A stretch of DNA of 63,496 nt, filler included, from Octopus bimaculoides (GCF_001194135.2; 5 parts of 4 records of this genome joined end to end with filler, not necessarily neighbours in it), one strand, 5' to 3'; numbered from the whole stretch's first letter, positions 33,489 through 48,377 are shown. The notes: generated from the sequence alone by a model not told the origin. A program made the numbers and translations.

Positions 33489-34040
33489 CAACGAAAGCCA
33501 GGTACAGAGGTTTATCCTTGGCTAGGTATTTCTCCTGCAGCTGTCTTACTAGAAATATGACATCAGTAGTGCTTTTACCTGGCACGAACCCAAACTGCAT
33601 CTCATCTAAATTGATTCGCTCCCTAATTAGTTGGGCTATGACCCTCTCTGTAACTTTCATAACCTGATCTAACAGCTTGATGCCTCTGTGATTATTTGTA
33701 TCTAAAGCGTCACCTTTACCTTTGTAGCAGTTGACTATGGTGCTGCTACACCAGTCATTGGGTATGACTCCTTCGTGTAACATGATTCTTATGGTAATAA
33801 TCTATCTACTGACAAGAGGATTTGACTTAACTACAAGCAATGTAGTAGTACTACTGATGAGCTTTAATTTCAAGCGAAACTGACATGCCAATTTAGCCCC
33901 CTCGCTCACTATGGGGCAGTTAACTCCCCTATCAGTACATAGACCTGTGCTATGTTTGTGGCTACAAGGGTCTTGACACTGATTTCTAGCAATGTAGGTG
34001 CTACAGTGGATCCTCAGTCACTATTAGGGACAATTGAAGT
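33489..34040 (-). mobile_element. RTE-clade LINE reverse transcriptase fragment
   Basis: IPNDWCSSTIVNCYKGKGDALDTNNHRGIKLLDQVMKV...EMQFGFVPGKSTTDVIFLVRQLQEKYLAKDKPLYLAFV, cut by a scaffold join. Confidence 0.92.
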
Positions 34041-34401: not shown

Positions 34402-34535
34402 GGAGCATTTTGTGTATGCTTCAATGGCTTGATAAAGCTCTCGACTGCAATAAAAGACGATACAAAGGTTTCACCCCATACGAGATTGTGCAAGGCCTGG
34501 AAAAGTTGGCTGTCACAGATTCTAACAAATTAAAG
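34402..34535 (+). CDS. ARM-TIR protein, first detected exon (helical repeat region)
   Basis: Acceptor ttttatttcttcctcag, donor AAG|gtgaac; 134 nt, phase 1 to 0; (x)SILCMLQWLDKALDCNKRRYKGFTPYEIVQGLEKLAVTDSNKLK, joining the next exon in frame. Confidence 0.82.
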
Positions 34536-34879
34536 GTGAACTTACTTTGAGACCATATTCTGTTCTTTATTCTGAAGGAATTAAACTTATGCTTCTTTGA
34601 GATTAAGACTTCTCTCTCTCACTGTCTCTCTATCTCTCTCTCTCTTTCTCACTGTCTCTCCATCTCTCTCTCTCTCTCATTGTCTCTCCATCTCTCTCTC
34701 ATTGTCTCTCCATCTCTCTCTCTCTCACTGTCTCTCCATCTCTCTCTCTCTTTCTCACTGTCTCTCCATCTCTCTCTCTCTCTTTCTCACTATCTCTTCA
34801 TCTCTCTCTCTCTCTCTCTCCATCTCTCTCTCTCTCTCTCTCTAACTCTCTTCCACCTTCCTCTCTTTGTTTGCCCCAC

Positions 34880-35155
34880 AGGAATCACCAAGAATCTCCT
34901 CAACAGAAAGAGGGCTACCTCTGTTCCCTTAACTGGTGTCACATTAAAAGCGCCTGTGCCACGTATGAAGCACTGCACTGGTACAACATAAAAAGCACCC
35001 CCAGTCCACTCTGTAAAGTGGTGGGCATTATAGGAAGGGCATCCAGCCATAGAAACTCTGCCGAAACAGACAATTGGAGAGTGGTACAGTTCTCTGGGTG
35101 GCCAGCTCCTGTCAAGCCGTCCGAACCATGCCGGCATAGAAAATGGATGTTAAAA
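34880..35155 (-). mobile_element. Family C repeat (LINE/SINE 3' tail next to a (GAT)n tract)
   Basis: Reverse complement of the 35410-35550, 44090-44240 and 47010-47190 copies (ccatgctggcatgggttggacgg...ggatgcccttcct). Confidence 0.8.
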
Positions 35156-35319
35156 GATGATGATGATGATGATGGCAATGACTATGACGATGATGACGAT
35201 GATGACGGCAATGGTAATGATGATGATGAAAAGGAGGAGGAGGAGGAGGGAAATGATGATGATGATGATGATGGTGGGGATGGTGATGACGACGATGATA
35301 ATGGTGGTGATGATGATGA

Positions 35320-35612
35320 CAAGTATCTTCTTCTATAGCCTCAGGCCGACCAAAGCCTTGTGAGTGGATTTGGTAGCCGTAAACTGAAAGAAACACATCA
35401 TATCATCATCATCAGCAGCAGCATCCTTTAACGCCTGTTTTCCATGCTGGCATGGGTTAGACGGTTTGACAAGAGCTGACCAGGCAGGAATCTGCACCAG
35501 ACTTCTATGTCTGTTTTGGCAAGGTTTTTACAAAGCTGGATGTCCTTCCTAACACATATATGTGTGTGTGTGTGTGTGTGTATGCATATATGTGTATTTA
35601 TGTGTACGTATG

Positions 35613-35649
<37 letters not shown>

Positions 35650-35880
35650 GTGTGCGTGTGTCTTTCTGTCTGTCAGCGTTTGTCCCCCACCACTGCTTGA
35701 CAACTGGTGTTGGTGTGTTTACATCCCAGTAGTAACTTAGCAGTTTGGCAAAAGAGACTGATAGAATAAGTGTCGAGCTTTAGAAAATAAAACTACTGGG
35801 GTTGATTCATTTGACCGAAATTCTTCTAGGCACTGCCCCAACATGGCCACAGACTGAAGCAATTAAAAAATAAATGATGA
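35320..35880 (+). mobile_element. SINE family A copy interrupted by a family C copy (about 35395-35552)
   Basis: Family A middle at 35320-35392 and 3' half at about 35650-35880 flank the family C sequence. Confidence 0.75.
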
Positions 35881-35974
35881 AAGATAAAATCCTAGATGTC
35901 ACTGCTGTTATTTCTTCTTTACCACTTTTTTTTTTACAGTTGTATATATTGTTTTTGTTTTTTTTTATTCTTAG

Positions 35975-36230
35975 ATTGTTGATGGTGGAATATTATCGAT
36001 GCTAAGTCGTATGTTACAATTTGATGACGTCCGCGAGCAATGCTCAGCTGCAAGGATTCTGTGGACGTTAATGTTTGATGAAAATGTGCGCGAAAGGTTA
36101 ATAAATGATGAACAAGCGTTGGTAACTCTACTGGAATCTCTCAAAGACAACAAAGACAAACTAGTCAGTGCAAATGTTAAAGGGGTGTTGTGGTTATTAA
36201 ATGGAGCAACACAAGTAACGGAGGTTGACA
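35975..36230 (+). CDS. ARM-TIR protein exon (ARM/HEAT-like repeats)
   Basis: Acceptor ttttttattcttag, donor ACA|gtaaga; 256 nt, phase 0 to 1; IVDGGILSMLSRMLQFDDVREQCSAARILWTLMFDENVRERL...VSANVKGVLWLLNGATQVTEVD, with ARM-like AARILWTL and VKGVLWLL helices. Confidence 0.88.
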
Positions 36231-36744
36231 GTAAGATTTTTCATTTCTTTCTCACTTTCATTTCTGTTTAATGCTTTTTTAAAAAAACTAAACAGATTAT
36301 GAGATTAAAAATATTGAGTTTTATTTGGATGGTTAAAATCTTATTATTTATAATTCTATAGAAAATTCAAAATTCGGTTTAAAATTCAAAATTCTATTTA
36401 AAATTTAAAATTCAGTTTGATATTCATAATTTTGTCTAATTTTATAATTCTATTTAAAATTCAAAATTCTATTTCAAATTTATAAAATGGGTGATTCTGT
36501 GACAGACCAGTGTCCCATCTAAGTGGGGAAATATATGCGCCAAAAAAAACTAACAGACTTATGAGTCTGTCTGACTTGAGAAGCAGGACGTTTATTCAAA
36601 TTATTCTTCTTGAAATCCATTTGCTGACATTTTGTTTTGTAAAAAAAAAATTATTATTTCCAAAATTAAAAAAAAAAAATAAAAATCCAATCCCAAAATG
36701 AAATTCCTGTTTTTTTTTTCTCTTTTTTCTTTTGTTGTTTCCAG

Positions 36745-36839
36745 AGGAGACGGTCCGTGCAAGAGCAAAGACACATGTTTTTATCAGTTACTCAGTGGTA
36801 GACAAAGAAAGTGTATGGAGAATCCGAGACAGGTTAAAG
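36745..36839 (+). CDS. ARM-TIR protein exon (linker, TIR betaA and alphaA)
   Basis: Acceptor ttcttttgttgtttccag, donor AAG|gttggt; 95 nt, phase 1 to 0; (K)ETVRARAKTHVFISYSVVDKESVWRIRDRLK, containing the TIR FISY motif. Confidence 0.88.
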
Positions 36840-37678
36840 GTTGGTTTCCACTTCAGATCTTACTGTTGTTACTTTTGTTGATCAGCCCTGAGTCAGCCTT
36901 GAGTCAACCCTGTGTCAACTTGCTTCAATAATTGCTTTTAGTTGGAGGAATTTGGAATGGAGCGGAGGGCAGAGGATGGATTTAGAGAATATAAGCGACA
37001 CTGTAATGTTATCTCTCCCTTTTTATTACACAGAATAGAGTAGAGAAGCAGTGCTGACTGATTGGCAGTCTTTAGATTGGTAAGTTTGGTGGTAGGGAAC
37101 TGCTGTAATGTGTGTGTGTGAGGAAATGGTAGCAGTGTGTTTGTGGATAACTAACTGTGCTGCATTGCCTGTAGGAATTTATAGGATGTTAGTAAAGGAA
37201 GGCTTACTAATCAATCAGATTGCGAAGGAAATCAATATCTACTAACTACAGATCACTATATACTCACTTACTCACTTGTGTGTCTGCCTAATTTTGCAGG
37301 CAGCAGTAAAATGGCAAAAGTTGATGAAGAATTTGGTTAAAGGGAAATAAATCTCTGATTCCATTTTGATAAATCTGATAACAACAATTCTAATCTTTAA
37401 TTTTCTAAAACAGATAAAGCAAAACCATGAACCTATTACTTTTAGTTTCTCACTATAATTATATTAATTATTGAGGATGGACGCTTTTAGTGGGTGAAGT
37501 TCTATTTACATTTAATTAAAACCAAAAACAACCACATTATTTCCTAATACGGTAATCACAGTTTCACTACACATTCCCCAAATCATTTCTCTTTGGTGAA
37601 ATTCTTCAATAAATTCTATCCTAGTAATACTGGTAATACTGCAGTATTAATGTCTAGGCCATTAATATGTATGTATGT

Positions 37679-37713
<35 letters not shown>

Positions 37714-37874
37714 NNNNNNNNNNNNNNNNNNNNNNNNNNNNNNNNNNNNNNNNNNNNNNNNNNNNNNNNNNNNNNNNNNNNNNNNNNNNNNNNNNNNNNN
37801 NNNNNNNNNNNNNNNNNNNNNNNNNNNNNNNNNNNNNNNNNNNNNNNNNNNNNNNNNNNNNNNNNNNNNNNNNN

Positions 37875-38080
37875 ATATATTTAAATTATGTCAGAAAAAT
37901 GTTATAAAATCTTTTTGGTATATAAACATTGTATTTTGAGAAATAACCGCTCTGGAGCGAACACGTTACAATGAAGTAGAGAAATTTGAAAAGACAACAC
38001 GAAACCAGTTATTTCTCAAAATACAATGTTTATATACCAAAAAGATTTTATAAGATTTTTCTGACATAATTTAAATATAT
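37875..38080. repeat. Foldback / MITE-like inverted repeat
   Basis: 73-bp arms 37875-37947 and 38008-38080 with one mismatch and a 60-bp spacer; left end abuts an N gap. Confidence 0.85.
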
Positions 38081-38204
38081 ACTTTAACCATGTAACACAA
38101 GCCTTCTGTAGTTTTTTCACTCTTATTATCTTTTATACATCCAACCACGTGCTTTCACATACCAACTTTCTCATATATATATATATATATATATATCTTT
38201 TATC

Positions 38205-38610
38205 CCTCTCTTCTACTGGTTTTAGTCATTAGACTGTGGCCATGCTGGGGCACCGCCTTGAGGAATTTTTGTCGAATAAATCAATGCCAGTACTTGTATA
38301 ATTTTTAAGCCTGGTACTTATTGTATCAGTTTCTTTTGCTGAACTGCTAAGTTACAGGGATGTAAACACACCAACACCAGTTGTAAAGCAGTGGTGGGGG
38401 GACAAACATAGACACAAAAGCACACATGACAGGGTTCTTTCAGTAAAAAAAGCACCCACTACACTCTCGGAGTGGTTGGTGTTAGGAAGGGCATCCAACT
38501 GTAGAAAAACCTTGCCAGATCAGATTGGTGCCAGGTGAGGCCTCCTGGCTTGCCAGTCCCCAGTCAAACCGTCCAACCCATGCCAATATGGAAAGTGAGT
38601 GTTAAACGAT
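38205..38610 (-). mobile_element. SINE family A 3' half (38205-38445) plus family C copy (38445-38610)
   Basis: Reverse-complement matches to the plus-strand family members; most CpGs mutated. Confidence 0.8.
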
Positions 38611-38702
38611 GATGATGATGATAATGATGATGATGATGACGCACCATGTTACAACCAAACCCACGTCACATTGATGATAATCACTATTACTTTAGTAACA
38701 TG

Positions 38703-38738
<36 letters not shown>

Positions 38739-40622
38739 GGGAATTTGCATTTTCCGTATCTTCACATGCATCCACTGTTTGTAAACAGTGAGCCTTGTTG
38801 TTGTTGGTGTTACTTACATGCCATCCAGTATGTAAGTTCGTCCCAGTTTCTCGACACGTCTCAACATGTTATGCTGTCTTTCTAAACAAACGGCTCATTC
38901 ACGCAGTGTCAATCATCTGTTTTCATTTCTGCACATAATAATTAGCTCTTTTGAAAACAAGTGGGGTGAAGTGCGTTGGGTGAATTGGCAACAGGAAATG
39001 TACTTAGCCATTGAGTTCTCTGTTCTGGCATAATTTCATGTGACCCACGTGACAACAACGACAACAATGTCAATAATGGTGATGACGATGATGATGATGA
39101 CGATGACAATGATGATGATGACAACAAAGATCTTGGTCATTGCCTCCATGAGACCCAACACTCAAAAGAAGCTCAGCCACTTTGCTTCCATGAGGCCCAA
39201 TGCTCAAAAGGACACCCTGTTAATGACACCCTGACTCAGCTCCACATGACTTAAAGTTGTGTGGGTATGTAGGACACACCCATCTCATCAGATGTCAGGT
39301 GAAGACTGAGAGAGAGTTAAGACAAATCCAAGATGGCTTCTAGGTGTTGAGCCTCTGTTGGTCAACTCAGGTTACTTAACAGCAATGTTGTGAAAGCAAC
39401 ACCATCTATTTTTCTTTATTCTTAGGTCCATATGAAATTGCAGTTTAGGTGTGAGAGGTCAGATACGGTCAGTTTGAATATAAAACAGGGAGAATATTTA
39501 GGCCAGTGGCTGATTTGAATGCTCAAGGGTTCAGGCTTTATTTATCCACACCAAAAAGAACCGAATGCAGAGCTGACCTCAGCCGGATTTGAACTGAGGT
39601 TGTTGACTGCCATAACAGATACTGCATGGCACTATATACTTGATTGTCTGACAACTCAGTTCATTTGTTTTGGGGAAACAATCTGAATTGATTATGTTTT
39701 GTTTGGGGTTTGTTTGTTTTTCTTTCAGTAAACTTAGCATGTTTTCTCTTGTCAAAGCAATTAAGTTAATTGTTATGCAAATGAGTTGAGCTAGGCAGAC
39801 AGTTAATTGCTTTGTCAGTAAGATATTTACCTTCTATGAATTTCCAGTTGAAGCAAATCAAAAAAGCAAAAATCTGTGACAGCGAAAATTATTCAATAAA
39901 GTTATATGTATGTTTAACCCTATAACATTTAAACTGTCCAGATCCAGCCTCTCACACCTACCTACAATGTCATTCTAAAAACAAACAGTCATATCATTGA
40001 AATCTTGAAGCTACGAGACAATGCTGAAAGGTTAAAAGTGTATGCCATAGATGAGACAAGAATACAGACATTTTGAAAAAATTTTCCCTTTTTAAAAAGA
40101 TTTAAAAGAGTTTGAATTTCTGTTTCCCAGGAGAAGAGTTTTGCTACTTGACATGTTAAGCTCACATCTTCCTATAACTGGGTAAGTTTATTCAAATGGA
40201 TAAAATTTAACAGTTTTGAGGCGAAATATAAAAGTAAACTGATTTACAGAGAGGTGATAGTGTGATATTTACCATTCTACTAATTCCTCATCATCATTAT
40301 CATTATCATCATTGTTTAACATCCATCTTCCATACTGGCTTGGGTTAAATTGTTCAACAGGATCTGACAAATGGGAGAACTGCACCAAGCTCTGATGCCT
40401 GGCATGGCTTCTTTGACTGGATGCCCTTCCTAGTACCAACCACTAGCCATTAGTTCATTTAGCTAAAAAGAAAGCAATTTTTATTTCTTCATACAATATG
40501 CAGAAAACACCACCAAGTAGCACTTTGTATACTTATTATAAATACAGTATGTTCTCTCATACATGTAAAAAATAAGTTGAAAATCTTCAAGCCATGAATA
40601 TTATACCAAAAAAAATCAACAG

Positions 40623-40932
40623 GTGCAGGAATGGCTGTGTGGTAAGTAGCTTGCTTACGAATCACATGGTTCCAGGTTCAGTCCCACTGCATGGCACCTT
40701 GGGCAAGTGTCTTCTACTATAGCCTCGGGCCGACCAAAGTCTTGTGAGTGGATTTGGTAGACAGAAACTGAAAGAAGCCCGTCGTATATATGTGTGTGTT
40801 TGTGTGTCTGTGTTTGTCCCCCCGACATCGCTTGACAACTGATGCTGGTGTGTTTACGTCACCCGTAACTTAGCGGTTCGGCAAAAAGAGACCGATAGGA
40901 TAAGTACTAGGCTTACAAAGAATAAGTCCTGG
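40623..40932 (+). mobile_element. SINE family A copy running into a gap
   Basis: tRNA-like head through cttacaaagaataagtcctgg; relatively intact. Confidence 0.88.
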
Positions 40933-42354
40933 NNNNNNNNNNNNNNNNNNNNNNNNNNNNNNNNNNNNNNNNNNNNNNNNNNNNNNNNNNNNNNNNNNNN
41001 NNNNNNNNNNNNNNNNNNNNNNNNNNNNNNNNNNNNNNNNNNNNNNNNNNNNNNNNNNNNNNNNNNNNNNNNNNNNNNNNNNNNNNNNNNNNNNNNNNNN
41101 NNNNNNNNNNNNNNNNNNNNNNNNNNNNNNNNNNNNNNNNNNNNNNNNNNNNNNNNNNNNNNNNNNNNNNNNNNNNNNNNNNNNNNNNNNNNNNNNNNNN
41201 NNNNNNNNNNNNNNNNNNNNNNNNNNNNNNNNNNNNNNNNNNNNNNNNNNNNNNNNNNNNNNNNNNNNNNNNNNNNNNNNNNNNAGGGATAAACAATATA
41301 AACTGGTGTGAAACTGGTGAAAAGTAACGACCATTTATTGTTCGTGTTGTTATTGTTGTTGCCATTTAAGCAGAGATTAGCCCTGATCAATCTAAACCTA
41401 CGACCAAAAGCATTTCAATTAGTATTATTCTGGTGAGTGGGGGGGGGGCAATTCAACGTGTGTCCTTCCTGTTCAAAAGATGGCAAGTATGATTCGAGGA
41501 AGCTGTGTTGCTGCTGCTGCGGTTGTTGTTTAATCTCAACTGACCTATGACCAACAACATTCCAACAGTGACCATCCCATCTTTTAATCAAAAACTAATG
41601 TTTCTCGCTTTTTGTTGATGTTTAGCACCCGGTCAGCCCCTGATCAGGCAGATCGATAATCAAGAGTGTTCCAATGGTGACCATCTAAACTTTTTGTTTC
41701 CAGGCATGATGCATCTAGAACTATATTATCTTAAATGTCTTTCCCACGGAGCCATTACAAACTGTGGTACCTATTACAGCTAGGTGGACTGGGCTGTTGA
41801 AAGTTAAATGTAAATTGCTAGTGACACAATAAAACCCCAACAACAGGATGTAAAATTTTAATCTAATTAGCTGGCTGCTTGGTAGAGAGAATTTACTATG
41901 CCAAGTATGGCTCTGGCCATACTGGAGTACTGCTAAACAGTAAATAAAGAAAATTCTGGGAGGCAGGGTGGAGCTTAGTTAGATAGAATCAGTATTAGAT
42001 GCCAAGATATACTGTGTTGACCAACCTAGTGGAGTTGTCAAAGATAGGAATCTTGTGGCGGTGGCAACAATACTGACAGCGATGACTGCTGCTGTGATGA
42101 CAATGACAGCAACAACAACAACAATTATGTTAATGAGAAGAACAATTGGCAACAGTGTCGGGGTAACTTCTGAGAAATTCTGTCATTCTAAATAACATTT
42201 TTGAAAAACATAAAATCTGTAATTACATGGAAGAAAGGAAGTAAACCACTTTGAATAATCAGAGAGGTCAGGTGACATTTCAACATCTTTCAGTCTATAA
42301 TCATAGGGTCAGGGCTAGGGGGAGAAATTTCTCTCCCCCCAGTTTATCTTTTAT

Positions 42355-42639
42355 CTTTTACTTGTTTCAGTCATTACACTGTGGCCATGCTGGGGCACTG
42401 CCTTGATGAATCTTTTTAAGGAATGAATTGACCCCAGTGTTAATAATTTTTTTTTTCTAAGCTTGGTACTTATTTTATCAGTCTCTTTTGCTGAACCACT
42501 AAGTTACAGGGACGTAAACACACCAATACCACATATCAAGCAATGGTGAGAACAAACACAAAGACACACCCACATACATATATATATACATGGTGGGCTT
42601 CTTTCAGTTTCCTTCTACCAAATCCACTCACAAGGCTTT
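42355..42639 (-). mobile_element. SINE family A copy, truncated at the R4-like fragment
   Basis: Reverse complement of the family A tail up to ccactcacaaggcttt; CpGs mutated. Confidence 0.8.
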
Positions 42640-43103
42640 ACGGATAGCATGGTCCTTGTACTGGTCAAAATATGCAATGTGCTCACAAATGCAAGTGGTC
42701 TGTTGATATGAACCAAAAGGTCATCCAGTGCCATGAACAAGCCCTGCTAGACAAGAACAATGGCAAATGTAAAGCTGTTGGAAAAAGACAATTTATTGAG
42801 ATTACTAAGATGTGGCAGCTACGAGAGTCGAATATAAAGGTTATCCCTACTGTCATCAGAGCATTGGGTTCAATACCACCCAATCTGAAAAAAAGACATC
42901 TGGAAACCTTAGAAATACCCTACAATCTAGGTGTATTGCAAAAGTCGACATTACTTGGAACTGCACGAATATTGCATAAAGTAGTGTCAGTCTGAGGTCC
43001 TTGTTGTGACTAGACAAGCAATACAAACCTCCGGTAGGCACAATATTTTTAATCAATAACCTCACAATATTGTATACTGTGCAACGTCTATAATAATAAT
43101 AAT
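42640..43103 (+). mobile_element. 5'-truncated R4/Dong-like retrotransposon 3' end (restriction-like endonuclease C-terminus, 3' UTR, (TAA)n tail)
   Basis: EITKMWQLRESNIKVIPTVIRALGSIPPNLKKRHLETLEIPYNLGVLQKSTLLGTARILHKVVSV* matches the RLE C-terminal pattern EI..MW...V.P.VIGALG...LQK..LLGTARIL; TAA repeats at about 43091-43103. Confidence 0.85.
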
Positions 43104-43936
43104 ACTTGTGAGTAGCACCTATGGTTTTGACCTTATGCATGAACATGCTCACATATATACACACACCCACTTATACGCTACCAAGTAGTCATTTCTTGTT
43201 TTCACCCCTCCTCCTCTGTCTGGTCTTTGAGTATAATATCAGCTTAAACAGTTGTCATTGTTTGTTTTCTCAATGACTCTTTCAATAGATCAAATCCAAC
43301 TCAACAGAGCAACTGGAGCAGAAATATGTCACAAAGGGATCTCAAAGCCAGCTGCTTTCAATGCAATGTTTTTGATTTTGTAGCAGGTCAAATGACACGT
43401 TTATCCAGTTACTAAAGTTGTAAATTTAGAAAAAGCTCACAAAGCACACACATACACACATACACACACACAATGAAATGTGTAGGACTTGATAGATATA
43501 CATAAATCATATAAATACAGGAAAATTTTTAATAGCCACTCAATAAAAAATACCATATAACTTCTACAAATTTTTAGCAGATGTAGACACATGGAGATGC
43601 TTCTTTTATTGAATTGAAGGGCACACACATTCTGGATTGCGTCTTGTAGACTGTTTTGTGTTCTAAACCTGTTGTATTTTTTGAGCTCTCTACAATCGGG
43701 TGGTGGGGAAGGATCATAATTCTTGATTTCATTTCTTTTTTCTCAAACCATTTTTTGCACCAACTTTCTTCATGTTTTTTCCATGTTTTTCTTATTTTCT
43801 TACTGACCAACATCTTTGATTTTTAAAAAATTATATACAATGCATAAACATAGCCTGAAAAGTTACTCTATGTCTGTTCAAGTATCATAACAGCATGAAA
43901 CTATTAGTAGCTCTTTCAGTCGTATATTTAATTTGA

Positions 43937-43982
<46 letters not shown>

Positions 43983-44008
43983 NNNNNNNNNNAGATATAG
44001 ATATATAT

Positions 44009-44056
<48 letters not shown>

Positions 44057-44089
44057 TTTAAGTTTGTATACAGGAAACATTTTGAATCA

Positions 44090-44240
44090 TCATCATCATC
44101 ATCATCATCGTTTAACATCCTCCTTCCATGCTGGCATGGGTTGGACGGTTTGACAGGGGCTGGCCAGGCAGGAGCCTGCACCAGACTTCTGTGTCTGTTT
44201 TGGCATGGTTTTTACAGCTGGATGCCCTTCCTAAGCCCCT
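44090..44240 (+). mobile_element. Family C repeat
   Basis: (CAT)n followed by gtttaacatcc...ccatgctggcatgggttggacgg...ggatgcccttcctaa. Confidence 0.8.
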
Positions 44241-46784
44241 ATTTTTTATGCCAGCCTAGTGATATCTACTGGCAATACTACTTTTTGGGGTGGGGGTCAT
44301 ACGAAGATGTACCAATATATAGCATATAGCACATGAAAATAGTGGTTGTTATTTTGTTTAATTGCTTAAACGTTCTCCCCTTGGTCTATTATATGCTGGA
44401 GGTGGTCAGTGTTTGAAACAGAAAAATACTGACTGCCTTTAGCACATAACAGAATGAGGGAAGAGCATAAACTATCAACCAAAATAACAACCATGCCATT
44501 TCCCATGCCATTATACCATTATACCATCAAAATGATGAAAAGGACATTTAAGAAAATATTATTTATTAACTCAGACAATGAACTTCAACAATTGATGACT
44601 TGCTGACCGGACGGACGGACCACTTCTGAATTAATTGAGAAGACATCTATTGTGACGGAGATGAAACCAAAGGACTCTTCTGCCCATCCTGACATCTGCA
44701 TACTCAAGTATCAAAACAAATCCAACATCACCACACACACCTCCATCTCCTTATAACTACCATTCTTTCCTCCATTTCCATCACATTCTACTCCTCCCCT
44801 CCCCACCTCAGTTCAAGGGTCTTGTCCTGAGAGTTACTTGGACACCAGCTGTAAAAACTCTTTCAGGCCTTGTGCCTATAGTAGAAAGGATTATCATTGT
44901 CGTCATCAGCGTTGCTGTCATCATTGTCATCGTCATCATTGTCGTCATCGACAGTGGTGGTGATGACGACACTGATGATATGTAACTCTATATAATAATG
45001 TTATTGATTTATGTACAAAAGAATACAAATAATAACAACATCTGGAGTTAGTATGAAATAATTAAAGCTAAGAGTTAATTGAGTTGGAAAAAATATATTG
45101 GTTTTAAAATTAAAAAAAAAAAATAATAAACATTGTCAGGTAGCAATAAAGGTGGCACTCACGTGTTACTTCAGGAAGGTGTCACTTTTTCTGATGCCAT
45201 GCTTCCTACAGGAATATATATCTCTCACCATCACTCATTACGACCACCTCTACTTCTTCTCCAACCATCTCTGCTCACACTCTTATGAAACTGCCCCCCC
45301 CCCACCTCTATTCCCTGCCCCTGCTCACTCACCCTCTCCAATCCTCTGTGACACTTCACTTATTTCCACCCTCCACTCTTCCTCAAGAGTACATTCCAAC
45401 ACATCACCACCATCATCAGTGTCTTCTACTATAGGCTCAGACTGACCAAAGCCTTGTGAGTGGATTTGGTAAATGGAAACTGAAAGAAGCCTGTCCATGT
45501 GAGCGAAACTGAGCTCTAGAAGCACTGTGTGTCCCAAGCACACTTAACAAGAAAAGCTCTCTCACACTCAACCACAACAAACGAAACCACAACAAACCAA
45601 ACCACAACAAACCAAACCACATCACTTCTCTTGGTCCTGTATCATTGCTATCCGCTAGCTTCTGACCTGCGTGTTCCACCCACACCCACGCCCTGTCTCA
45701 CCATATCGTGGCATATGCCCAGCACTTTGCTACCATCTCTATTCTACTGTCTCCCCCCTCTCTCTCTCTCCTTCTCTTGCACTTCCCACATACACACACA
45801 ACCTTCTGGCATTGTACTGAAAATTCCAGAATTCTCTTATCTTTCATCACCTTAATTTTTTTCACCCAAAATTCCCACATTCCAGAAATTCCCCCCCCCC
45901 CCGACAATGGTATTTTATTCTGTGTCATGAGACACCACCTAAACATTTCAGTTAGTTCATTGCTCATTTATAGGTGGACATCATTGTTTTTTTATAGTGT
46001 AAGCTATCACGTGTGATATGTAACAGAACAATGAATGAATTTTTAACAGGTAAAAAGAGGCAAGAGTCGACTTTCATAAAATATACACCAAACAAAATCA
46101 GTTCAGAATTCAATCTGGAATGATCAAAGAAATGGAATTTATTTCCAGATCTGTTGCAATAAAGCTTTCGTTTCTGACAGCTAAGACATGGATATGGTTG
46201 TGTGGTTAAGAAATTTGCTTCCACTGCACAGCAACTAGGGGAAGCAGTGGCAGATGCCAGAGCGTTGCCTAAGCAACACCCTTTTTAGCCGAGCTGACAC
46301 CTAAAAAATTGGAACCAAGGATTTTTGGGCAACAGTCAAGGAAAAGGAAGTCAACGTTTACTTGAATAATTTTTTCAAATCTTTTGGGCAACACACATAT
46401 ATATATACACCTGTTGTATGGAATATGCATACAGCTACATGTCCCTTAGGACTGAAGGAGAATGCGCCAAGATCAGGTTTAATATTTCTGATACAGGTGA
46501 GAACAAAGGAGGAAGTTGTGATCACACAAGAAACCCAACCTGAATATTTGTGACAATATATGTTTTACTTAATGTCAGCCGAACACTGGATGGATTATGT
46601 TCAGCTACCATGGGGAGACGAAAATATTGAAGTTTCAAGAAAAACCATTCTTTGAAAAGAGGGGAAAATTGTTTTTAAATGTTTTGTGGTAGCACCAAGA
46701 AGTCTGCTACGATTCTAGATGAAAGTTAGAAGATCCTAATTGGTCAATGTATTTATTAGCATTCTAACTTCTCTTTTCTTTCAG

Positions 46785-46926
46785 GAAGAAGGTTACCAGT
46801 TATGGATAGATGTTGACTGTATGGGGCCTTCGAATTTACAAGCCATGGCTAGTGGTATAGAAAACGCTGCTGTTGTCTTAATTTGCATGTCTGAGAAATA
46901 CAAACAAAGCCCTAGCTGTCGTACAG
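46785..46926 (+). CDS. ARM-TIR protein exon (TIR betaB, BB loop, betaC, start of alphaC)
   Basis: Acceptor ctcttttctttcag, donor CAG|gtgaga; 142 nt, phase 0 to 1; EEGYQLWIDVDCMGPSNLQAMASGIENAAVVLICMSEKYKQSPSCRT. Confidence 0.93.
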
Positions 46927-47009
46927 GTGAGAAGCGAAACTCATAGAATATAAAATATACTATAACTGACAGGAAAATTACAGAACACACCATAATCATC
47001 ATAATCATC

Positions 47010-47300
47010 ATCATGATTAAATGTTTGTTTTCCATGCTGGTATGGGTTGGATGTTCTGACAGGAGCTGGCAAGGCCAGGAGCCACACCAGGTTCCAGTTG
47101 TCTGTTCTGGCATGGTTTCTACAGCTGGAGGCCCTTCCTAATGCCAACCACTTTACAGAGAGTGTTGGGTGCTTTTTATGTGGCACCAGCACCAATGCTT
47201 TACGTGTGACACCAATGGGGATGCTGTATCTGTGACACTAGCTTGATTGCTTTTTACGTGGCACCAGCACACCATATGGTCATCATTATCATCAGCATCA
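47010..47300 (+). mobile_element. Family C repeat
   Basis: ccatgctggtatgggttggatg...cccttcctaatgccaaccactttacagagagtg...gtggcaccagcac. Confidence 0.8.
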
Positions 47301-47569
47301 TCATCATCATCATCATATATATTTTAGTGGTTTCAATTAATTGTGTGCAGCAATGCTGAGGTACGACCTGCAAGGGTAGACAGAAACTGTACTGAAGCCC
47401 AACAGGTCGGTTGTATCTGTAATTCAAAAGGTACGACCTTCTCACATATGTAAGTTTTGCTGATTCTGGCTAAGAATTAAGTTGCAGAAATATGAAGGGT
47501 GGGGTTAGACAATGATATCAACTAAGCCTGCCCCTAAAATCTCCAAGCTTTCTGCCTAAATTGCTTTTG

Positions 47570-47760
47570 AATTTAGGCACAAGGCCAGCAATTTCAGGGG
47601 ACATGCTAAGTCAGTTATATCCACCCCAACTGGTTCAACTAGTACTTTTCTCAACTCCAAAAGGACGGAAGACACAGTTGGCCCCAGGAGTACTTGAATT
47701 CAGGATGTAAAGACAGGTGAAATTCCACTGAACTATTCTGTCAGCTCACCACCTGGCCTT
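47570..47760 (-). mobile_element. Degenerate SINE family B copy
   Basis: ggcacaaggccagcaatttc...gacaggtgaaat...tgtcagctc; CpGs largely lost. Confidence 0.65.
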
Positions 47761-48165
47761 ATGTATCAAATTAAAAAGCCACATTAATCCTTCAGCATTT
47801 AAACCTGCCATATCCGGCCCAAATATTCTAGCCATTTTATATCCAAACTGGCCAAATCCGGTTTCTCACACCTACCCTACAATGTCATTCTAAAAATAAC
47901 CACTCACCTCATCAAAATCTCAAAGCTATGAGATAATGCAGGATTAATTGAAACAATGTGGATTAATAAGCATTACATGCGGTAGAATACTCTGAATGCT
48001 AAAGGATTTAGTGATTATCACAGACAGTGTCAACTTCTTGACAAAATCATAAGAAAAATCTTATGGTTTTTTTCTCATTTTTCTTTGTTAAAGATTTTTA
48101 CTTCATTACTTTTCTGCAACATTTAAAGAAATTAATTGCTTTTCTTTTTCTTTAAATTATTTCAG

Positions 48166-48377
48166 AAGCTGAATACACATTTCGATTACGTAAAGACTAC
48201 ATTCCAATGATGATGCAGAAAAAATACAATCCAGATGGTTGGCTTGGTACCATGCTTGGAGCAAAATTGTTCTTTGATTTTAGTGGGAAGTACCCTTTTG
48301 AGAAGAGTTTTGGTGGACTTATAAAAGAACTTCGTGGACGTGGACAATATTCACCTGGTGATGCTCAAGGTTTGTGA
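48166..48377 (+). CDS. ARM-TIR protein exon (TIR alphaC to alphaE); ends at TGA 48375-77 or splices at 48369/48370
   Basis: Acceptor ttctttttctttaaattatttcag; phase 1 start completes GAA; (E)AEYTFRLRKDYIPMMMQKKYNPDGWLGTMLGAKLFFDFSGKYPFEKSFGGLIKELRGRGQYSPGDAQ(GL*), with the DGWLG motif of invertebrate TIR_2 proteins. Confidence 0.93.

What the first reader, a model, noticed from the sequence alone, without database searches (positions are those of the whole stretch)
34402..48377. Spliced ARM-repeat + TIR gene: candidate SARM1-like NADase or immune executioner with no intervening SAM domains
Seen: five exons with GT-AG boundaries and matching phases (1-0, 0-1, 1-0, 0-1, 1-) join into one stop-free frame of about 278 aa; introns are 1439, 514, 9945 and 1239 bp. 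Helical repeats (GFTPYEIVQGLEKLAVTDSNKLKIVDGGIL, AARILWTLMFD, VKGVLWLL) lead after a roughly 20-aa linker into a full TIR fold: HVFISY, LWIDV, VVLICMS, SPSCRTEAEY, YIPMMMQ, DGWLG, LFFDFS. Established: TIR domains of SARM1, plant TNL receptors and bacterial Thoeris/TIR_2 proteins cleave NAD+ using the Glu of an SxxCxxE-type alphaC helix, and SARM1's ARM domain is an autoinhibitory NMN/NAD+ sensor. TIR-only and ARM-TIR families exist in molluscs but are largely uncharacterised. Inference: this may be a metabolite- or pathogen-gated NADase or signalling enzyme in a cephalopod, activated without SARM1's SAM octamer.
Basis: partly seen in the sequence, partly recalled or inferred. Interest (0 to 1): 0.75.

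Follow-up and report, generated by a model that had tools for sequence, protein, structure and literature searches.

The report
Partial ARM–TIR(–SAM) immune-type gene
The five exons are real and encode the middle of an armadillo-repeat plus TIR protein from a large, already catalogued but functionally untested eukaryotic family; its relatives end in a SAM domain, so it is not a SAM-less SARM1 relative.

Summary
All three assembly gaps lie inside intron 3, and homologues align across that junction without a missing residue.

The product has canonical armadillo repeats followed by a TIR_2 domain (E 1.5e-22). It carries every near-invariant family residue, including the catalytic-position Glu (E209), whose codon is split by intron 4.

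The model is only an internal fragment. Family members have a median length of 644 aa, with more ARM repeats upstream. In 122 of 141 representatives a divergent SAM domain sits at the extreme C-terminus. Exon 5 has a GT donor 5 nt before the "stop", at the same position and phase as in a genomic relative whose SAM exons lie 2-5 kb downstream. The piece ends 505 bp after that donor.

The family is large: 1831 clusters at E≤1e-30. A 2026 TIR atlas lists about 595 members, including Octopus and Sepia. Four isolated TIR domains of this cluster gave no detectable activity in E. coli there.

The TIR shows no sequence similarity to SARM1. Verdict: a real gene and a new member of a known, uncharacterised kind. 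NADase activity is plausible but unproven, and the "no SAM" claim is probably wrong.

The parts
34402..34535 (+). Exon 1 of the fragment (starts in phase 1, ends in phase 0), aa 1-44. It encodes part of an ARM repeat (…GFTPYEIVQGLEKLAVTDSNKLK).
   Evidence: Acceptor ttcctcag|GG and donor AAG|gtgaac. Family profile E 9e-9. tblastn boundaries fall at 34538.
34536..35974 (+). Intron 1 (1439 bp). It contains a CT-rich microsatellite and one copy of a SINE-like repeat.
35975..36230 (+). Exon 2 (phase 0 to 1), aa 45-129 plus 1 nt. It encodes ARM repeats (IVDGGILSML…AARILWTLMFD…VKGVLWLL) and the start of the linker.
   Evidence: Acceptor ttcttag|ATT and donor ACA|gtaaga, the only donor in frame with exon 3. 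Profile E 6e-17. PDB phmmer hits Vac8 ARM at 1e-10; the profile hits Vac8 and beta-catenin at about 1e-25 to 1e-13.
36231..36744 (+). Intron 2 (514 bp).
36745..36839 (+). Exon 3 (phase 1 to 0), aa 130-161. It encodes the linker plus TIR beta-A and alpha-A (HVFISYSVVDKESVWRIRDRLK).
   Evidence: Acceptor tttccag|AG and donor AAG|gttggt. Profile E 1.6e-4. The Pfam TIR_2 match starts at aa 141.
36840..46784 (+). Intron 3 (nominally 9945 bp). It holds all three assembly gaps (37714-37874, 40933-41284, 43983-43992) and several SINE-like repeat copies, and no family exon.
   Evidence: The homologue alignment is continuous across the exon 3/4 join.
46785..46926 (+). Exon 4 (phase 0 to 1), aa 162-208 plus 1 nt. 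It encodes TIR beta-B (LWIDVD), the BB loop, alpha-B, beta-C (VVLICMS) and SPSCRT. Its last base, G, is the first base of the catalytic-position Glu codon.
   Evidence: Acceptor ctttcag|GAA and donor ACAG|gtgaga. Profile E 1.6e-25.
46927..48165 (+). Intron 4 (1239 bp). It splits the codon of Glu209 (G | AA).
48166..48369 (+). Exon 5 (starts in phase 1), aa 209-276 plus 1 nt. It encodes TIR alpha-C to alpha-E (E-AEYTFRLRKDYIPMMMQKKYNPDGWLG…LFFDFSGKYPFEK…).
   Evidence: Acceptor tatttcag|AA. Profile E 8.6e-31. The Pfam TIR_2 match ends at aa 259.
48370..48377 (+). gtttgTGA: a probable 5' splice donor of a further intron.
   Evidence: The donor is at the same residue position and phase as G|GTATGT in related locus L001, where SAM-encoding exons follow 2-5 kb downstream. 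No SAM exon lies in the remaining 505 bp of the piece.

Best explanation
The window holds five internal exons of a cytosolic protein with the architecture [more ARM repeats]–ARM–TIR–SAM.

Shown:
- The gene structure.
- Canonical armadillo repeats joined by a linker of about 15 aa to a complete TIR_2 domain.
- All family-invariant TIR residues are present, including the alpha-C Glu.
- The gene belongs to a very large eukaryote-wide family whose typical member is about 640 aa and ends in a divergent SAM domain.

Inferred:
- The missing 5' exons encode more ARM repeats. The missing 3' exons, reached from the donor at 48370, encode the SAM domain.
- The SAM domain assembles the protein into oligomers or polymers.
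- The ARM solenoid binds a protein or peptide ligand and/or holds the TIR apart.
- On activation the clustered TIR domains form composite active sites and process NAD+, either depleting it or making a cADPR-type signal, using Glu209.

In parts list and likely logic it works like SARM1 (ARM regulator, SAM oligomeriser, TIR enzyme). It is an independently assembled, differently ordered protein, not a SARM1 orthologue. My confidence is about 0.95 for the identity and about 0.45-0.5 for the enzymatic mechanism.
For: Gene model and domains:
- The gene model is supported.
- Pfam TIR_2 scores 80.8 bits against a cutoff of 28.
- ARM: Vac8 at 1e-10 with the single sequence; designed ARM, Vac8 and beta-catenin at about 1e-25 to 1e-13 with the profile; Pfam Arm is above cutoff in many relatives.

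Structure:
- An AF2 model of a 45%-identical homologue gives an ARM solenoid, a TIR and a five-helix C-terminal bundle (pLDDT 78).
- The TIR-only model (pLDDT 82) is closest to the SPARTA TIR-APAZ NADase (rmsd 2.2-2.9 Å). It also matches MyD88, RPS4 and SARM1 TIRs.
- PADLOC gives bacterial effector TIRs: bSEFIR, SAVED-TIR and short-pAgo TIR.

Family and SAM tail:
- 1831 representative clusters reach E≤1e-30, and most top hits match the ARM–TIR–SAM profile end to end.
- A SAM-tail HMM hits 122 of 141 representatives, a median of 2 residues from the C-terminus.
- The tail profile hits only SAM domains in PDB: TEL/ETV6 4e-10, liprin-beta 6e-10, SMS1 2e-6, SARM1 SAM 9e-6.
- The conserved donor and downstream SAM exons are seen in L001 and L002.

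Active site:
- Glu209 is conserved in 136 of 141 representatives. S144, Y145, W168, D170, Y200, S203 and L235 are each conserved in 138-139 of 141.
- The structure-based 'GLU' call for this cluster is in Hurieva et al. 2026 Table S2.
- A 39%-identical oyster TIR does make cADPR in a Glu-dependent way.
Against: - Four isolated TIR domains of the same cluster (amphioxus, 59% identical to the window's TIR; Phallusia; Chlamydomonas; gar) showed no cADPR, 2'cADPR or 3'cADPR and no NAD+ depletion in E. coli.
- The aromatic residue four positions before the Glu (Trp in SARM1 and plant TIRs) is Ser or Asn here.
- The SAM exons and N-terminal exons are not in the piece, so this gene's full architecture is inferred from relatives.
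- No expression data exist.
- The SAM identification rests on profile hits and a predicted fold. Pfam does not reach its cutoff.
Confidence: 0.6

Rival explanations
1. Non-catalytic adaptor. The TIR acts only as a protein-protein scaffold in TLR/MyD88-type signalling. The ARM and SAM domains recruit partners, and the conserved Glu is structural or binds a partner.
For: - Four TIRs of this cluster were inactive in the E. coli screen.
- The 'ecTIR-DC' class of invertebrate TIR proteins has been proposed to act as adaptors or regulators (PMC6321704).
- Aplysia 'ARM-TIR' genes are filed under adaptors (PMC9334734).
- Foldseek also matches the MyD88 and MAL TIR filaments.
Against: - An adaptor surface is not expected to show near-absolute conservation of Glu209 together with the S-x-x-C-R-x-E-A-E-Y helix, W-x-D and S-Y motifs across about 140 clusters spanning animals, algae and protists, many of which lack TLRs.
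- The nearest solved and profile relatives are bacterial NADase effector TIRs.
- The negative assays used isolated domains, and known NADases RUN1 and RPP1 also failed in them.
Confidence: 0.28
2. The protein really ends at the TGA at 48375-48377, giving an ARM-TIR protein with no SAM domain that is gated by a metabolite through its ARM domain, like SARM1 but without an oligomerisation ring.
For: - The open frame does reach a stop 8 nt after the donor.
- A minority of family representatives (19 of 141) lack a detectable SAM tail, as do some annotated mollusc models (Mytilus P0001, Elysia P0002, Dreissena P0014).
- An intron-retaining short isoform is possible.
Against: - The donor is conserved in position and phase with a relative whose SAM exons follow.
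- 87% of representatives have the SAM at the very C-terminus.
- The SAM-less mollusc models end in sequence that looks like intron read-through or a duplicated segment.
- The ARM repeats show no sequence similarity to the SARM1 ARM (no SARM1 at E≤1; none among the 60 hits listed).
- The piece ends only 505 bp downstream.
Confidence: 0.1
3. A decaying or unexpressed gene copy (pseudogene fragment) in a repeat-rich region.
For: - The introns are packed with SINE-like repeats, and a reverse-transcriptase fragment lies upstream.
- Only part of the gene is visible, and there are no expression data.
Against: - All five exons are open, and all splice sites are canonical with matching phases.
- Every near-invariant family residue is intact.
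Confidence: 0.04

Closest known systems
ARM–TIR(–SAM) proteins annotated only as 'TIR domain-containing protein'. Examples: Mytilus edulis P0001, Candidula P0003, Patella P0004/P0007, spotted gar W5N735, amphioxus A0A8J9W3M3. This is TIR cluster A0A0B7AZE4_1 of Hurieva et al. 2026 and the 'ARM-TIR' class of the Aplysia immunome.
   Same: - 54% identity to Mytilus over 90% of the fragment.
- 59% TIR identity to the amphioxus member.
- The same ARM-linker-TIR layout, the same invariant residues and the same intron positions as a genomic relative.
   Different: Nothing qualitative. The window shows only the middle of the gene. The closest hit returned is 54% identical, so it is a distinct orthologue or paralogue.
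SARM1 / dSarm / TIR-1
   Same: - The same three kinds of domain: ARM repeats, SAM and a TIR with an alpha-C Glu.
- The tail profile detects the SARM1 SAM domain at 9e-6.
- Foldseek matches the SARM1 TIR fold.
- An autoinhibit, oligomerise and cleave-NAD+ logic is plausible.
   Different: - The domain order is ARM–TIR–SAM(x1), not ARM–SAM–SAM–TIR.
- There is no TIR sequence similarity (BLASTP E 1.8), and it sits in a different TIR cluster in the 2026 atlas (T1J6E6_2 against A0A0B7AZE4_1).
- The ARM is the canonical beta-catenin/Vac8 type.
- There is no evidence for an NMN/NAD+ pocket.
- Trp at Glu-4 is replaced by Ser/Asn.
Bacterial defence-effector TIRs (SPARTA TIR-APAZ, SAVED-TIR, bSEFIR)
   Same: - The best structural match is SPARTA TIR (rmsd 2.2-2.9 Å, 20-24% identity).
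- These are the best PADLOC profile hits.
- They are NADases activated by oligomerisation.
   Different: The partner domains differ (APAZ/Ago, SAVED). These are prokaryotic proteins, and the similarity is remote.
Oyster (Magallana gigas) TIR A0A8W8J0Z4, shown to make cADPR in E. coli (Hurieva et al. 2026)
   Same: 39% identity over the whole TIR at E 3e-32, with the same motifs (ISY, VWxD, S..C.xEA.Y, GWL).
   Different: It belongs to a different 40%-identity cluster (K1QUY0_1). I could not check its flanking domains in the held tables.
Amphioxus 'TIR-SAM' hybrid gene (Zhang et al. 2008, Genome Biol 9:R123)
   Same: A TIR followed by a SAM was noted as a novel domain combination with cDNA support. 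Amphioxus members of the present family are abundant.
   Different: I could not confirm that model Brafl1_131196 is a member of this family. No ARM domain was mentioned.

Membership tests
TIR domain (Pfam TIR_2, PF13676) | Profile score above the curated gathering cutoff | tested here: met
   80.8 bits against a cutoff of 28, E 1.5e-22, aa 141-259, covering profile positions 1-120 of 122.
TIR domain (Pfam TIR_2, PF13676) | Flavodoxin-like alternating beta/alpha fold that superposes on solved TIR domains | tested here: met
The AF2 model has pLDDT 82 with five strands and five helices. Foldseek matches SPARTA, MyD88, RPS4, Hydra TRR-2 and SARM1 TIRs at E 4e-6 to 1e-4.
Catalytic (NAD+-processing) TIRs | [quoted passage not shown] | tested here: met
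   Window E209 aligns with W5N735 E317, which the structure-based pipeline of Hurieva et al. called the catalytic GLU. It is conserved in 136 of 141 representatives and lies in the predicted alpha-C helix.
Catalytic (NAD+-processing) TIRs | Glu-dependent NAD+ turnover or cADPR-isomer production | not testable with these tools
   Published screen: four TIRs of the same cluster were negative, and a 39%-identical oyster TIR was positive.
ARM–TIR–SAM family (TIR cluster A0A0B7AZE4_1; mollusc 'ARM-TIR') | TIR at least 40% identical to cluster members | tested here: met
   59% to amphioxus A0A8J9W3M3. The two main TIR exons are 57-59% identical to gar W5N735.
ARM–TIR–SAM family (TIR cluster A0A0B7AZE4_1; mollusc 'ARM-TIR') | Canonical armadillo repeats immediately N-terminal to the TIR | tested here: met
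   Vac8 at 1e-10. Profile hits to Vac8, beta-catenin and ODAD2 at about 1e-25 to 1e-12. Pfam ARM families are sub-threshold on the fragment itself but above cutoff in relatives.
ARM–TIR–SAM family (TIR cluster A0A0B7AZE4_1; mollusc 'ARM-TIR') | SAM domain at the extreme C-terminus | tested here: inconclusive
   It is not encoded in the piece, which ends 505 bp after exon 5. The conserved phase-1 donor is present. 122 of 141 relatives have the SAM tail.
ARM–TIR–SAM family (TIR cluster A0A0B7AZE4_1; mollusc 'ARM-TIR') | Shared intron positions with genomic relatives | tested here: met
   All four introns fall at the same residue positions as in L001, and the fifth donor is at the same position and phase.
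SARM1 orthologues | Domain order ARM – SAM – SAM – TIR | tested here: not met
   The TIR follows the ARM repeats after about 15 residues. In relatives a single SAM lies C-terminal to the TIR.
SARM1 orthologues | TIR domain recognisably related in sequence to the SARM1 TIR | tested here: not met
   BLASTP E 1.8 against the human SARM1 TIR. SARM1 is absent from the PDB phmmer hits at E≤1.
SARM1 orthologues | NMN/NAD+ allosteric pocket in the ARM domain | not tested
   Most of the ARM region lies outside the piece. The visible repeats show no sequence match to the SARM1 ARM (no SARM1 at E≤1; none among the 60 hits listed).
MyD88-type TIR adaptors | Death domain | tested here: not met
   No death-domain hit in the fragment or in 17 relatives scanned.

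The most novel reading that the evidence does not exclude
The ARM–TIR–SAM family may be an ancient second 'SARM-type' machine that arose independently of SARM1 by a different arrangement of the same three domain types. It occurs in animals from corals to a ray-finned fish, and also in green algae, diatoms and amoebozoans. In this reading, a C-terminal polymerising SAM domain, so far unannotated because Pfam misses it, clusters TIR domains that stay silent as isolated domains. That would explain the negative E. coli screens. An ARM solenoid gates a Glu209-dependent NAD+-consuming or nucleotide-signal-producing activity in immunity or cell death.
Probability: 0.3. Interest if true: 0.7.

Novelty: new member of a known kind. 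Interest (0 to 1): 0.35.

Why it matters
As a single locus it is ordinary: one more member of a family with well over a thousand sequence clusters that has already been listed in TIR surveys.

The family itself is worth attention. It is among the most widespread non-TLR TIR families in eukaryotes, and its active-site Glu is almost never lost. It carries a SAM domain that standard annotation misses. The only biochemical tests so far used the TIR domain without that SAM.

If SAM-driven clustering is what switches the TIR on, this family would be a second, independently built SARM1-like NAD+ executioner or signal generator. It would also be a concrete explanation for false negatives in isolated-domain screens of animal TIRs.

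Tried and rejected
- **Whole-protein Foldseek.** It was dominated by designed ARM proteins and by poor multi-domain SARM1 superpositions (rmsd 12-29 Å) and was uninformative. A TIR-only model was used for the fold comparison.
- **Source organism.** Exact-sequence look-ups of two window ORFs found nothing. No returned protein is more than 54% identical over the full fragment. The 2026 atlas does list Octopus vulgaris and Sepia pharaonis members.
- **Extra exons.** A search for 5' ARM or 3' SAM exons in the piece by tblastn and six-frame HMM found none. One SAM-profile hit in intron 3 (40581-40646, E 0.5) is chance.
- **Alternative exon 2 donor.** The phase-0 donor at 36214 (CAA|gtaacg) was rejected because it is out of frame with exon 3.
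- **SARM1 orthology.** Rejected.
- **Pfam detection of SAM.** It failed: only sub-threshold SAM_1, SAM_2 and SAM_3 hits. A 40-sequence tail profile against PDB was needed.
- **RNA genes.** tRNA and Rfam scans of the piece found nothing.
- **Literature.** Gerdol et al. 2017 (the ecTIR-DC classification) is not held in the library. I cite it only through PMC6321704.
Full report
**Observation**

The exons are 34402-34535, 35975-36230, 36745-36839, 46785-46926 and 48166-48377. Each is preceded by a polypyrimidine tract plus AG and, for the first four, followed by GT. The phases are 1-0, 0-1, 1-0, 0-1 and 1-. The introns are 1439, 514, 9945 and 1239 bp, and the joined frame gives 278 residues without a stop.

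The signal is far above chance. A profile built only from homologues hits each exon separately in a six-frame scan (E 9e-9, 6e-17, 1.6e-4, 1.6e-25, 8.6e-31) and hits nothing else in the 15.4-kb piece on either strand. tblastn alignments of seven homologues stop exactly at the splice sites.

**Assembly gaps**

The three N runs all lie in intron 3. They make that intron's length an estimate but touch no codon. The exon 3/exon 4 junction (…RIRDRLK|EEGYQLWIDV…) aligns to 14 homologues with no residue missing or inserted. The same intron position occurs in a related genomic locus. An exon hidden in a gap is therefore excluded. A scaffold misjoin would have to reunite two halves of one TIR domain in the right order, strand and phase.

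**What it encodes**

- *TIR.* Residues 141-259 are a complete TIR_2 domain (80.8 bits against a cutoff of 28).
- *ARM.* Residues 1 to about 125 are canonical armadillo repeats. Pfam ARM families are sub-threshold on this short fragment. phmmer against PDB gives Vac8 at 1e-10. The family profile gives designed ARM proteins, Vac8, ODAD2, beta-catenin and importin-alpha at about 1e-25 to 1e-9. Pfam Arm is above cutoff in many relatives.
- *Whole-protein model.* An AlphaFold model of the 45%-identical Candidula homologue (pLDDT 78) shows an ARM solenoid, a short disordered linker, a TIR, a second disordered linker and a five-helix C-terminal bundle.
- *TIR-only model.* This model (pLDDT 82) superposes best on the SPARTA TIR-APAZ NADase (rmsd 2.2-2.9 Å). 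It then matches MyD88, RPS4, Hydra TRR-2 and SARM1 TIRs. PADLOC profiles give bacterial effector TIRs.

**The model is only a fragment**

- Exon 1 opens in phase 1, so upstream exons exist.
- The 'stop' (TGA, 48375-48377) lies 5 nt inside a good donor, CAAG|gtttgtga.
- In a related locus (L001, with L002 a near-copy) the equivalent exon ends at G|GTATGT at the same residue and phase.
- Exons 2-5 kb further on in L001 encode …FAQLDGRLLWQLKLMKDE and APQFFFQLLDTKLKLSFVDILKFTAAIDELQ-stop.
- L001 also has two further ARM exons upstream.
- The window piece ends 505 bp after the donor and starts 913 bp before exon 1. Neither stretch contains a family exon.

**The family**

An exhaustive HMMER search with an ARM–TIR–tail profile finds 1831 representative clusters at E≤1e-30. 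Most of the top 150 match the profile from position 4 to 392 of 393 in one stretch that ends at their own C-terminus.

Among the 141 new representatives the median length is 644 aa. A tail HMM hits 122 of them, a median of 2 residues from the C-terminus. Pfam does not recognise this tail above threshold. A 40-sequence tail profile searched against PDB returns only SAM domains:

| PDB SAM domain | E-value |
|---|---|
| TEL/ETV6 | 4e-10 |
| liprin-beta | 6e-10 |
| SMS1 (almost full length) | 2e-6 |
| SARM1 SAM | 9e-6 |
| Shank, neurabin, DGK-delta | weaker |

The family's canonical architecture is therefore (ARM)n–TIR–SAM.

**Prior knowledge**

- Mollusc immunome papers list 'ARM-TIR' genes as uncharacterised putative adaptors. 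Aplysia has 11 (PMC9334734).
- Invertebrate 'ecTIR-DC' proteins have been proposed to be adaptors or regulators (PMC6321704).
- A TIR-SAM combination with cDNA support was noted in amphioxus in 2008 (PMC2575513).
- Most relevant is the TIR atlas of Hurieva et al. (bioRxiv 10.64898/2026.04.20.719644). It places the gar homologue W5N735 (my P0005) in one 40%-identity TIR cluster, represented by A0A0B7AZE4_1.
  - The cluster has about 595 entries in the held, truncated table.
  - Other members include two Octopus vulgaris proteins, a Sepia pharaonis protein, Lottia, Mytilus, amphioxus, corals and rotifers, and also green algae, a diatom, a haptophyte and an amoebozoan.
  - Members seen in the retrieved rows, apart from apparently truncated models, carry an N-terminal 'TPR-clan' (ARM) domain. 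Nearly all have GLU at the catalytic position; one Haematococcus entry has PHE. No SAM is annotated there.

**Active site**

Window Glu209 corresponds to W5N735 Glu317, that study's structure-based catalytic residue. Its codon is split by intron 4 (G|AA), so correct splicing creates it.

Conservation across the 141 representatives, all of which the window protein retains:

| Residue | Conserved in |
|---|---|
| Glu209 | 136 |
| S144, Y145, W168, D170, Y200, L235 | 139 |
| S203 | 138 |
| W234 | 137 |

The Trp found four residues before the Glu in SARM1 and plant TIRs is Ser or Asn here.

**Experimental evidence from the literature**

Evidence against activity:
- In Table S4 of the preprint, four isolated TIR domains of this very cluster have a blank 'Active' column. 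They come from Chlamydomonas, Branchiostoma lanceolatum, gar and Phallusia. None gave cADPR, 2'cADPR or 3'cADPR, and none depleted NAD+.
- The window's TIR is 59% identical to the amphioxus one.

Reasons those negatives are weak:
- Known NADases RUN1 and RPP1 were also negative in that assay.
- The authors stress that isolated domains lack oligomerisation and flanking-domain context, and that several known products were not measured.
- The gar construct has an aberrant beta-A region.
- A 39%-identical oyster TIR from a neighbouring cluster did make cADPR in a Glu-dependent way.

**Relation to SARM1**

- The domain order differs: ARM–TIR–SAM against ARM–SAM–SAM–TIR.
- BLASTP of the window TIR against the human SARM1 TIR is non-significant (E 1.8).
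- SARM1 is absent from the sequence hits for the ARM and TIR parts (no SARM1 at E≤1; none among the 60 hits listed).
- The atlas puts SARM1 in a different cluster.

It is therefore not a SARM1 family member, although it has the same three kinds of parts.

**Mechanism**

- *Shown:* the gene structure, the domains, the conservation pattern and family membership.
- *Inferred:* the SAM domain oligomerises or polymerises the protein. The ARM solenoid binds a ligand and/or restrains the TIR. Clustered TIRs then use Glu209 to process NAD+.

I put about 0.95 on the identity and about 0.45-0.5 on catalysis. The main rival is a purely scaffolding adaptor (about 0.28).

**Verdict**

This is a new member of a known, catalogued but functionally open family. 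As a locus its interest is modest. The family-level point is the more interesting lead: an overlooked terminal SAM domain, and assays done without it.

**Limits**

- The source organism is not determined.
- The spliced window protein itself could not be modelled.
- There are no expression data.
- The SAM domain and the N-terminus of this particular gene are inferred from relatives.

Noticed in passing
window 33489-33783 (- strand): This is a reverse-transcriptase fragment (…FGFVPGKSTTDVIFLVRQLQEKY…; Pfam RVT_1 E 0.001, below cutoff). It runs into the left edge of the piece, so it is cut off. It is a retroelement remnant about 620 bp upstream of exon 1.
   Followed up: partly
window 35031-35532, 38302-38641, 40278-40860, 42354-42639, 44074-44216, 45416-45499, 46980-47140: A short interspersed (SINE-like) repeat occurs in at least seven copies in both orientations within introns 1, 3 and 4, at 60-89% identity. 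It often adjoins (GAT/GAC)n tracts that create spurious poly-Asp and poly-His ORFs. There was no tRNA or Rfam match.
   Followed up: partly
window 34581-34906: A long CT-rich compound microsatellite (period 8-14, more than 20 overlapping copies) sits in intron 1. It gives the 'LSLSLSL' ORFs on the + strand.
   Followed up: no
window 37875-37947 and 38008-38080: A 73-nt inverted repeat, 99% complementary with a 60-nt spacer, starts at the very first base after assembly gap 1. It looks like an assembly or foldback artefact at the gap edge rather than biology. Gap 3 (43983-43992) sits inside a TA-rich palindromic microsatellite.
   Followed up: no
relatives P0003-P0016 and P0039-P0178 (C-terminal about 75 aa); L001 15058-15174, L002 14187-14303: The family's C-terminal domain is a SAM domain. 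Pfam scores it below cutoff, and the 2026 TIR atlas table does not annotate it. This is a family-wide annotation gap.
   Followed up: yes
P0005 (spotted gar W5N735) residues about 247-275: The gar protein's TIR beta-A/alpha-A region (SDHFLLPYQEGRLTIPVWENMF) departs from the otherwise near-invariant H-x-x-I-S-Y… pattern, and its SAM region is partly replaced by hydrophobic junk. This is probably a gene-model error. If so, the published negative activity test of this construct says little.
   Followed up: partly
P0001 (Mytilus edulis) residues about 180-203; P0002 (Elysia) C-terminus: The annotated Mytilus protein contains a duplicated EKYKLSPNCRL segment and a non-homologous tail. The Elysia model ends in sequence that looks like intron read-through. 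The apparent SAM-less mollusc members may be annotation artefacts.
   Followed up: no
L001 12289-12832: Tandem short ORF fragments of roughly 32-64 nt period lie in the intron between the TIR and SAM exons of the related locus. They give repeated weak SAM-profile hits and look like a minisatellite.
   Followed up: no
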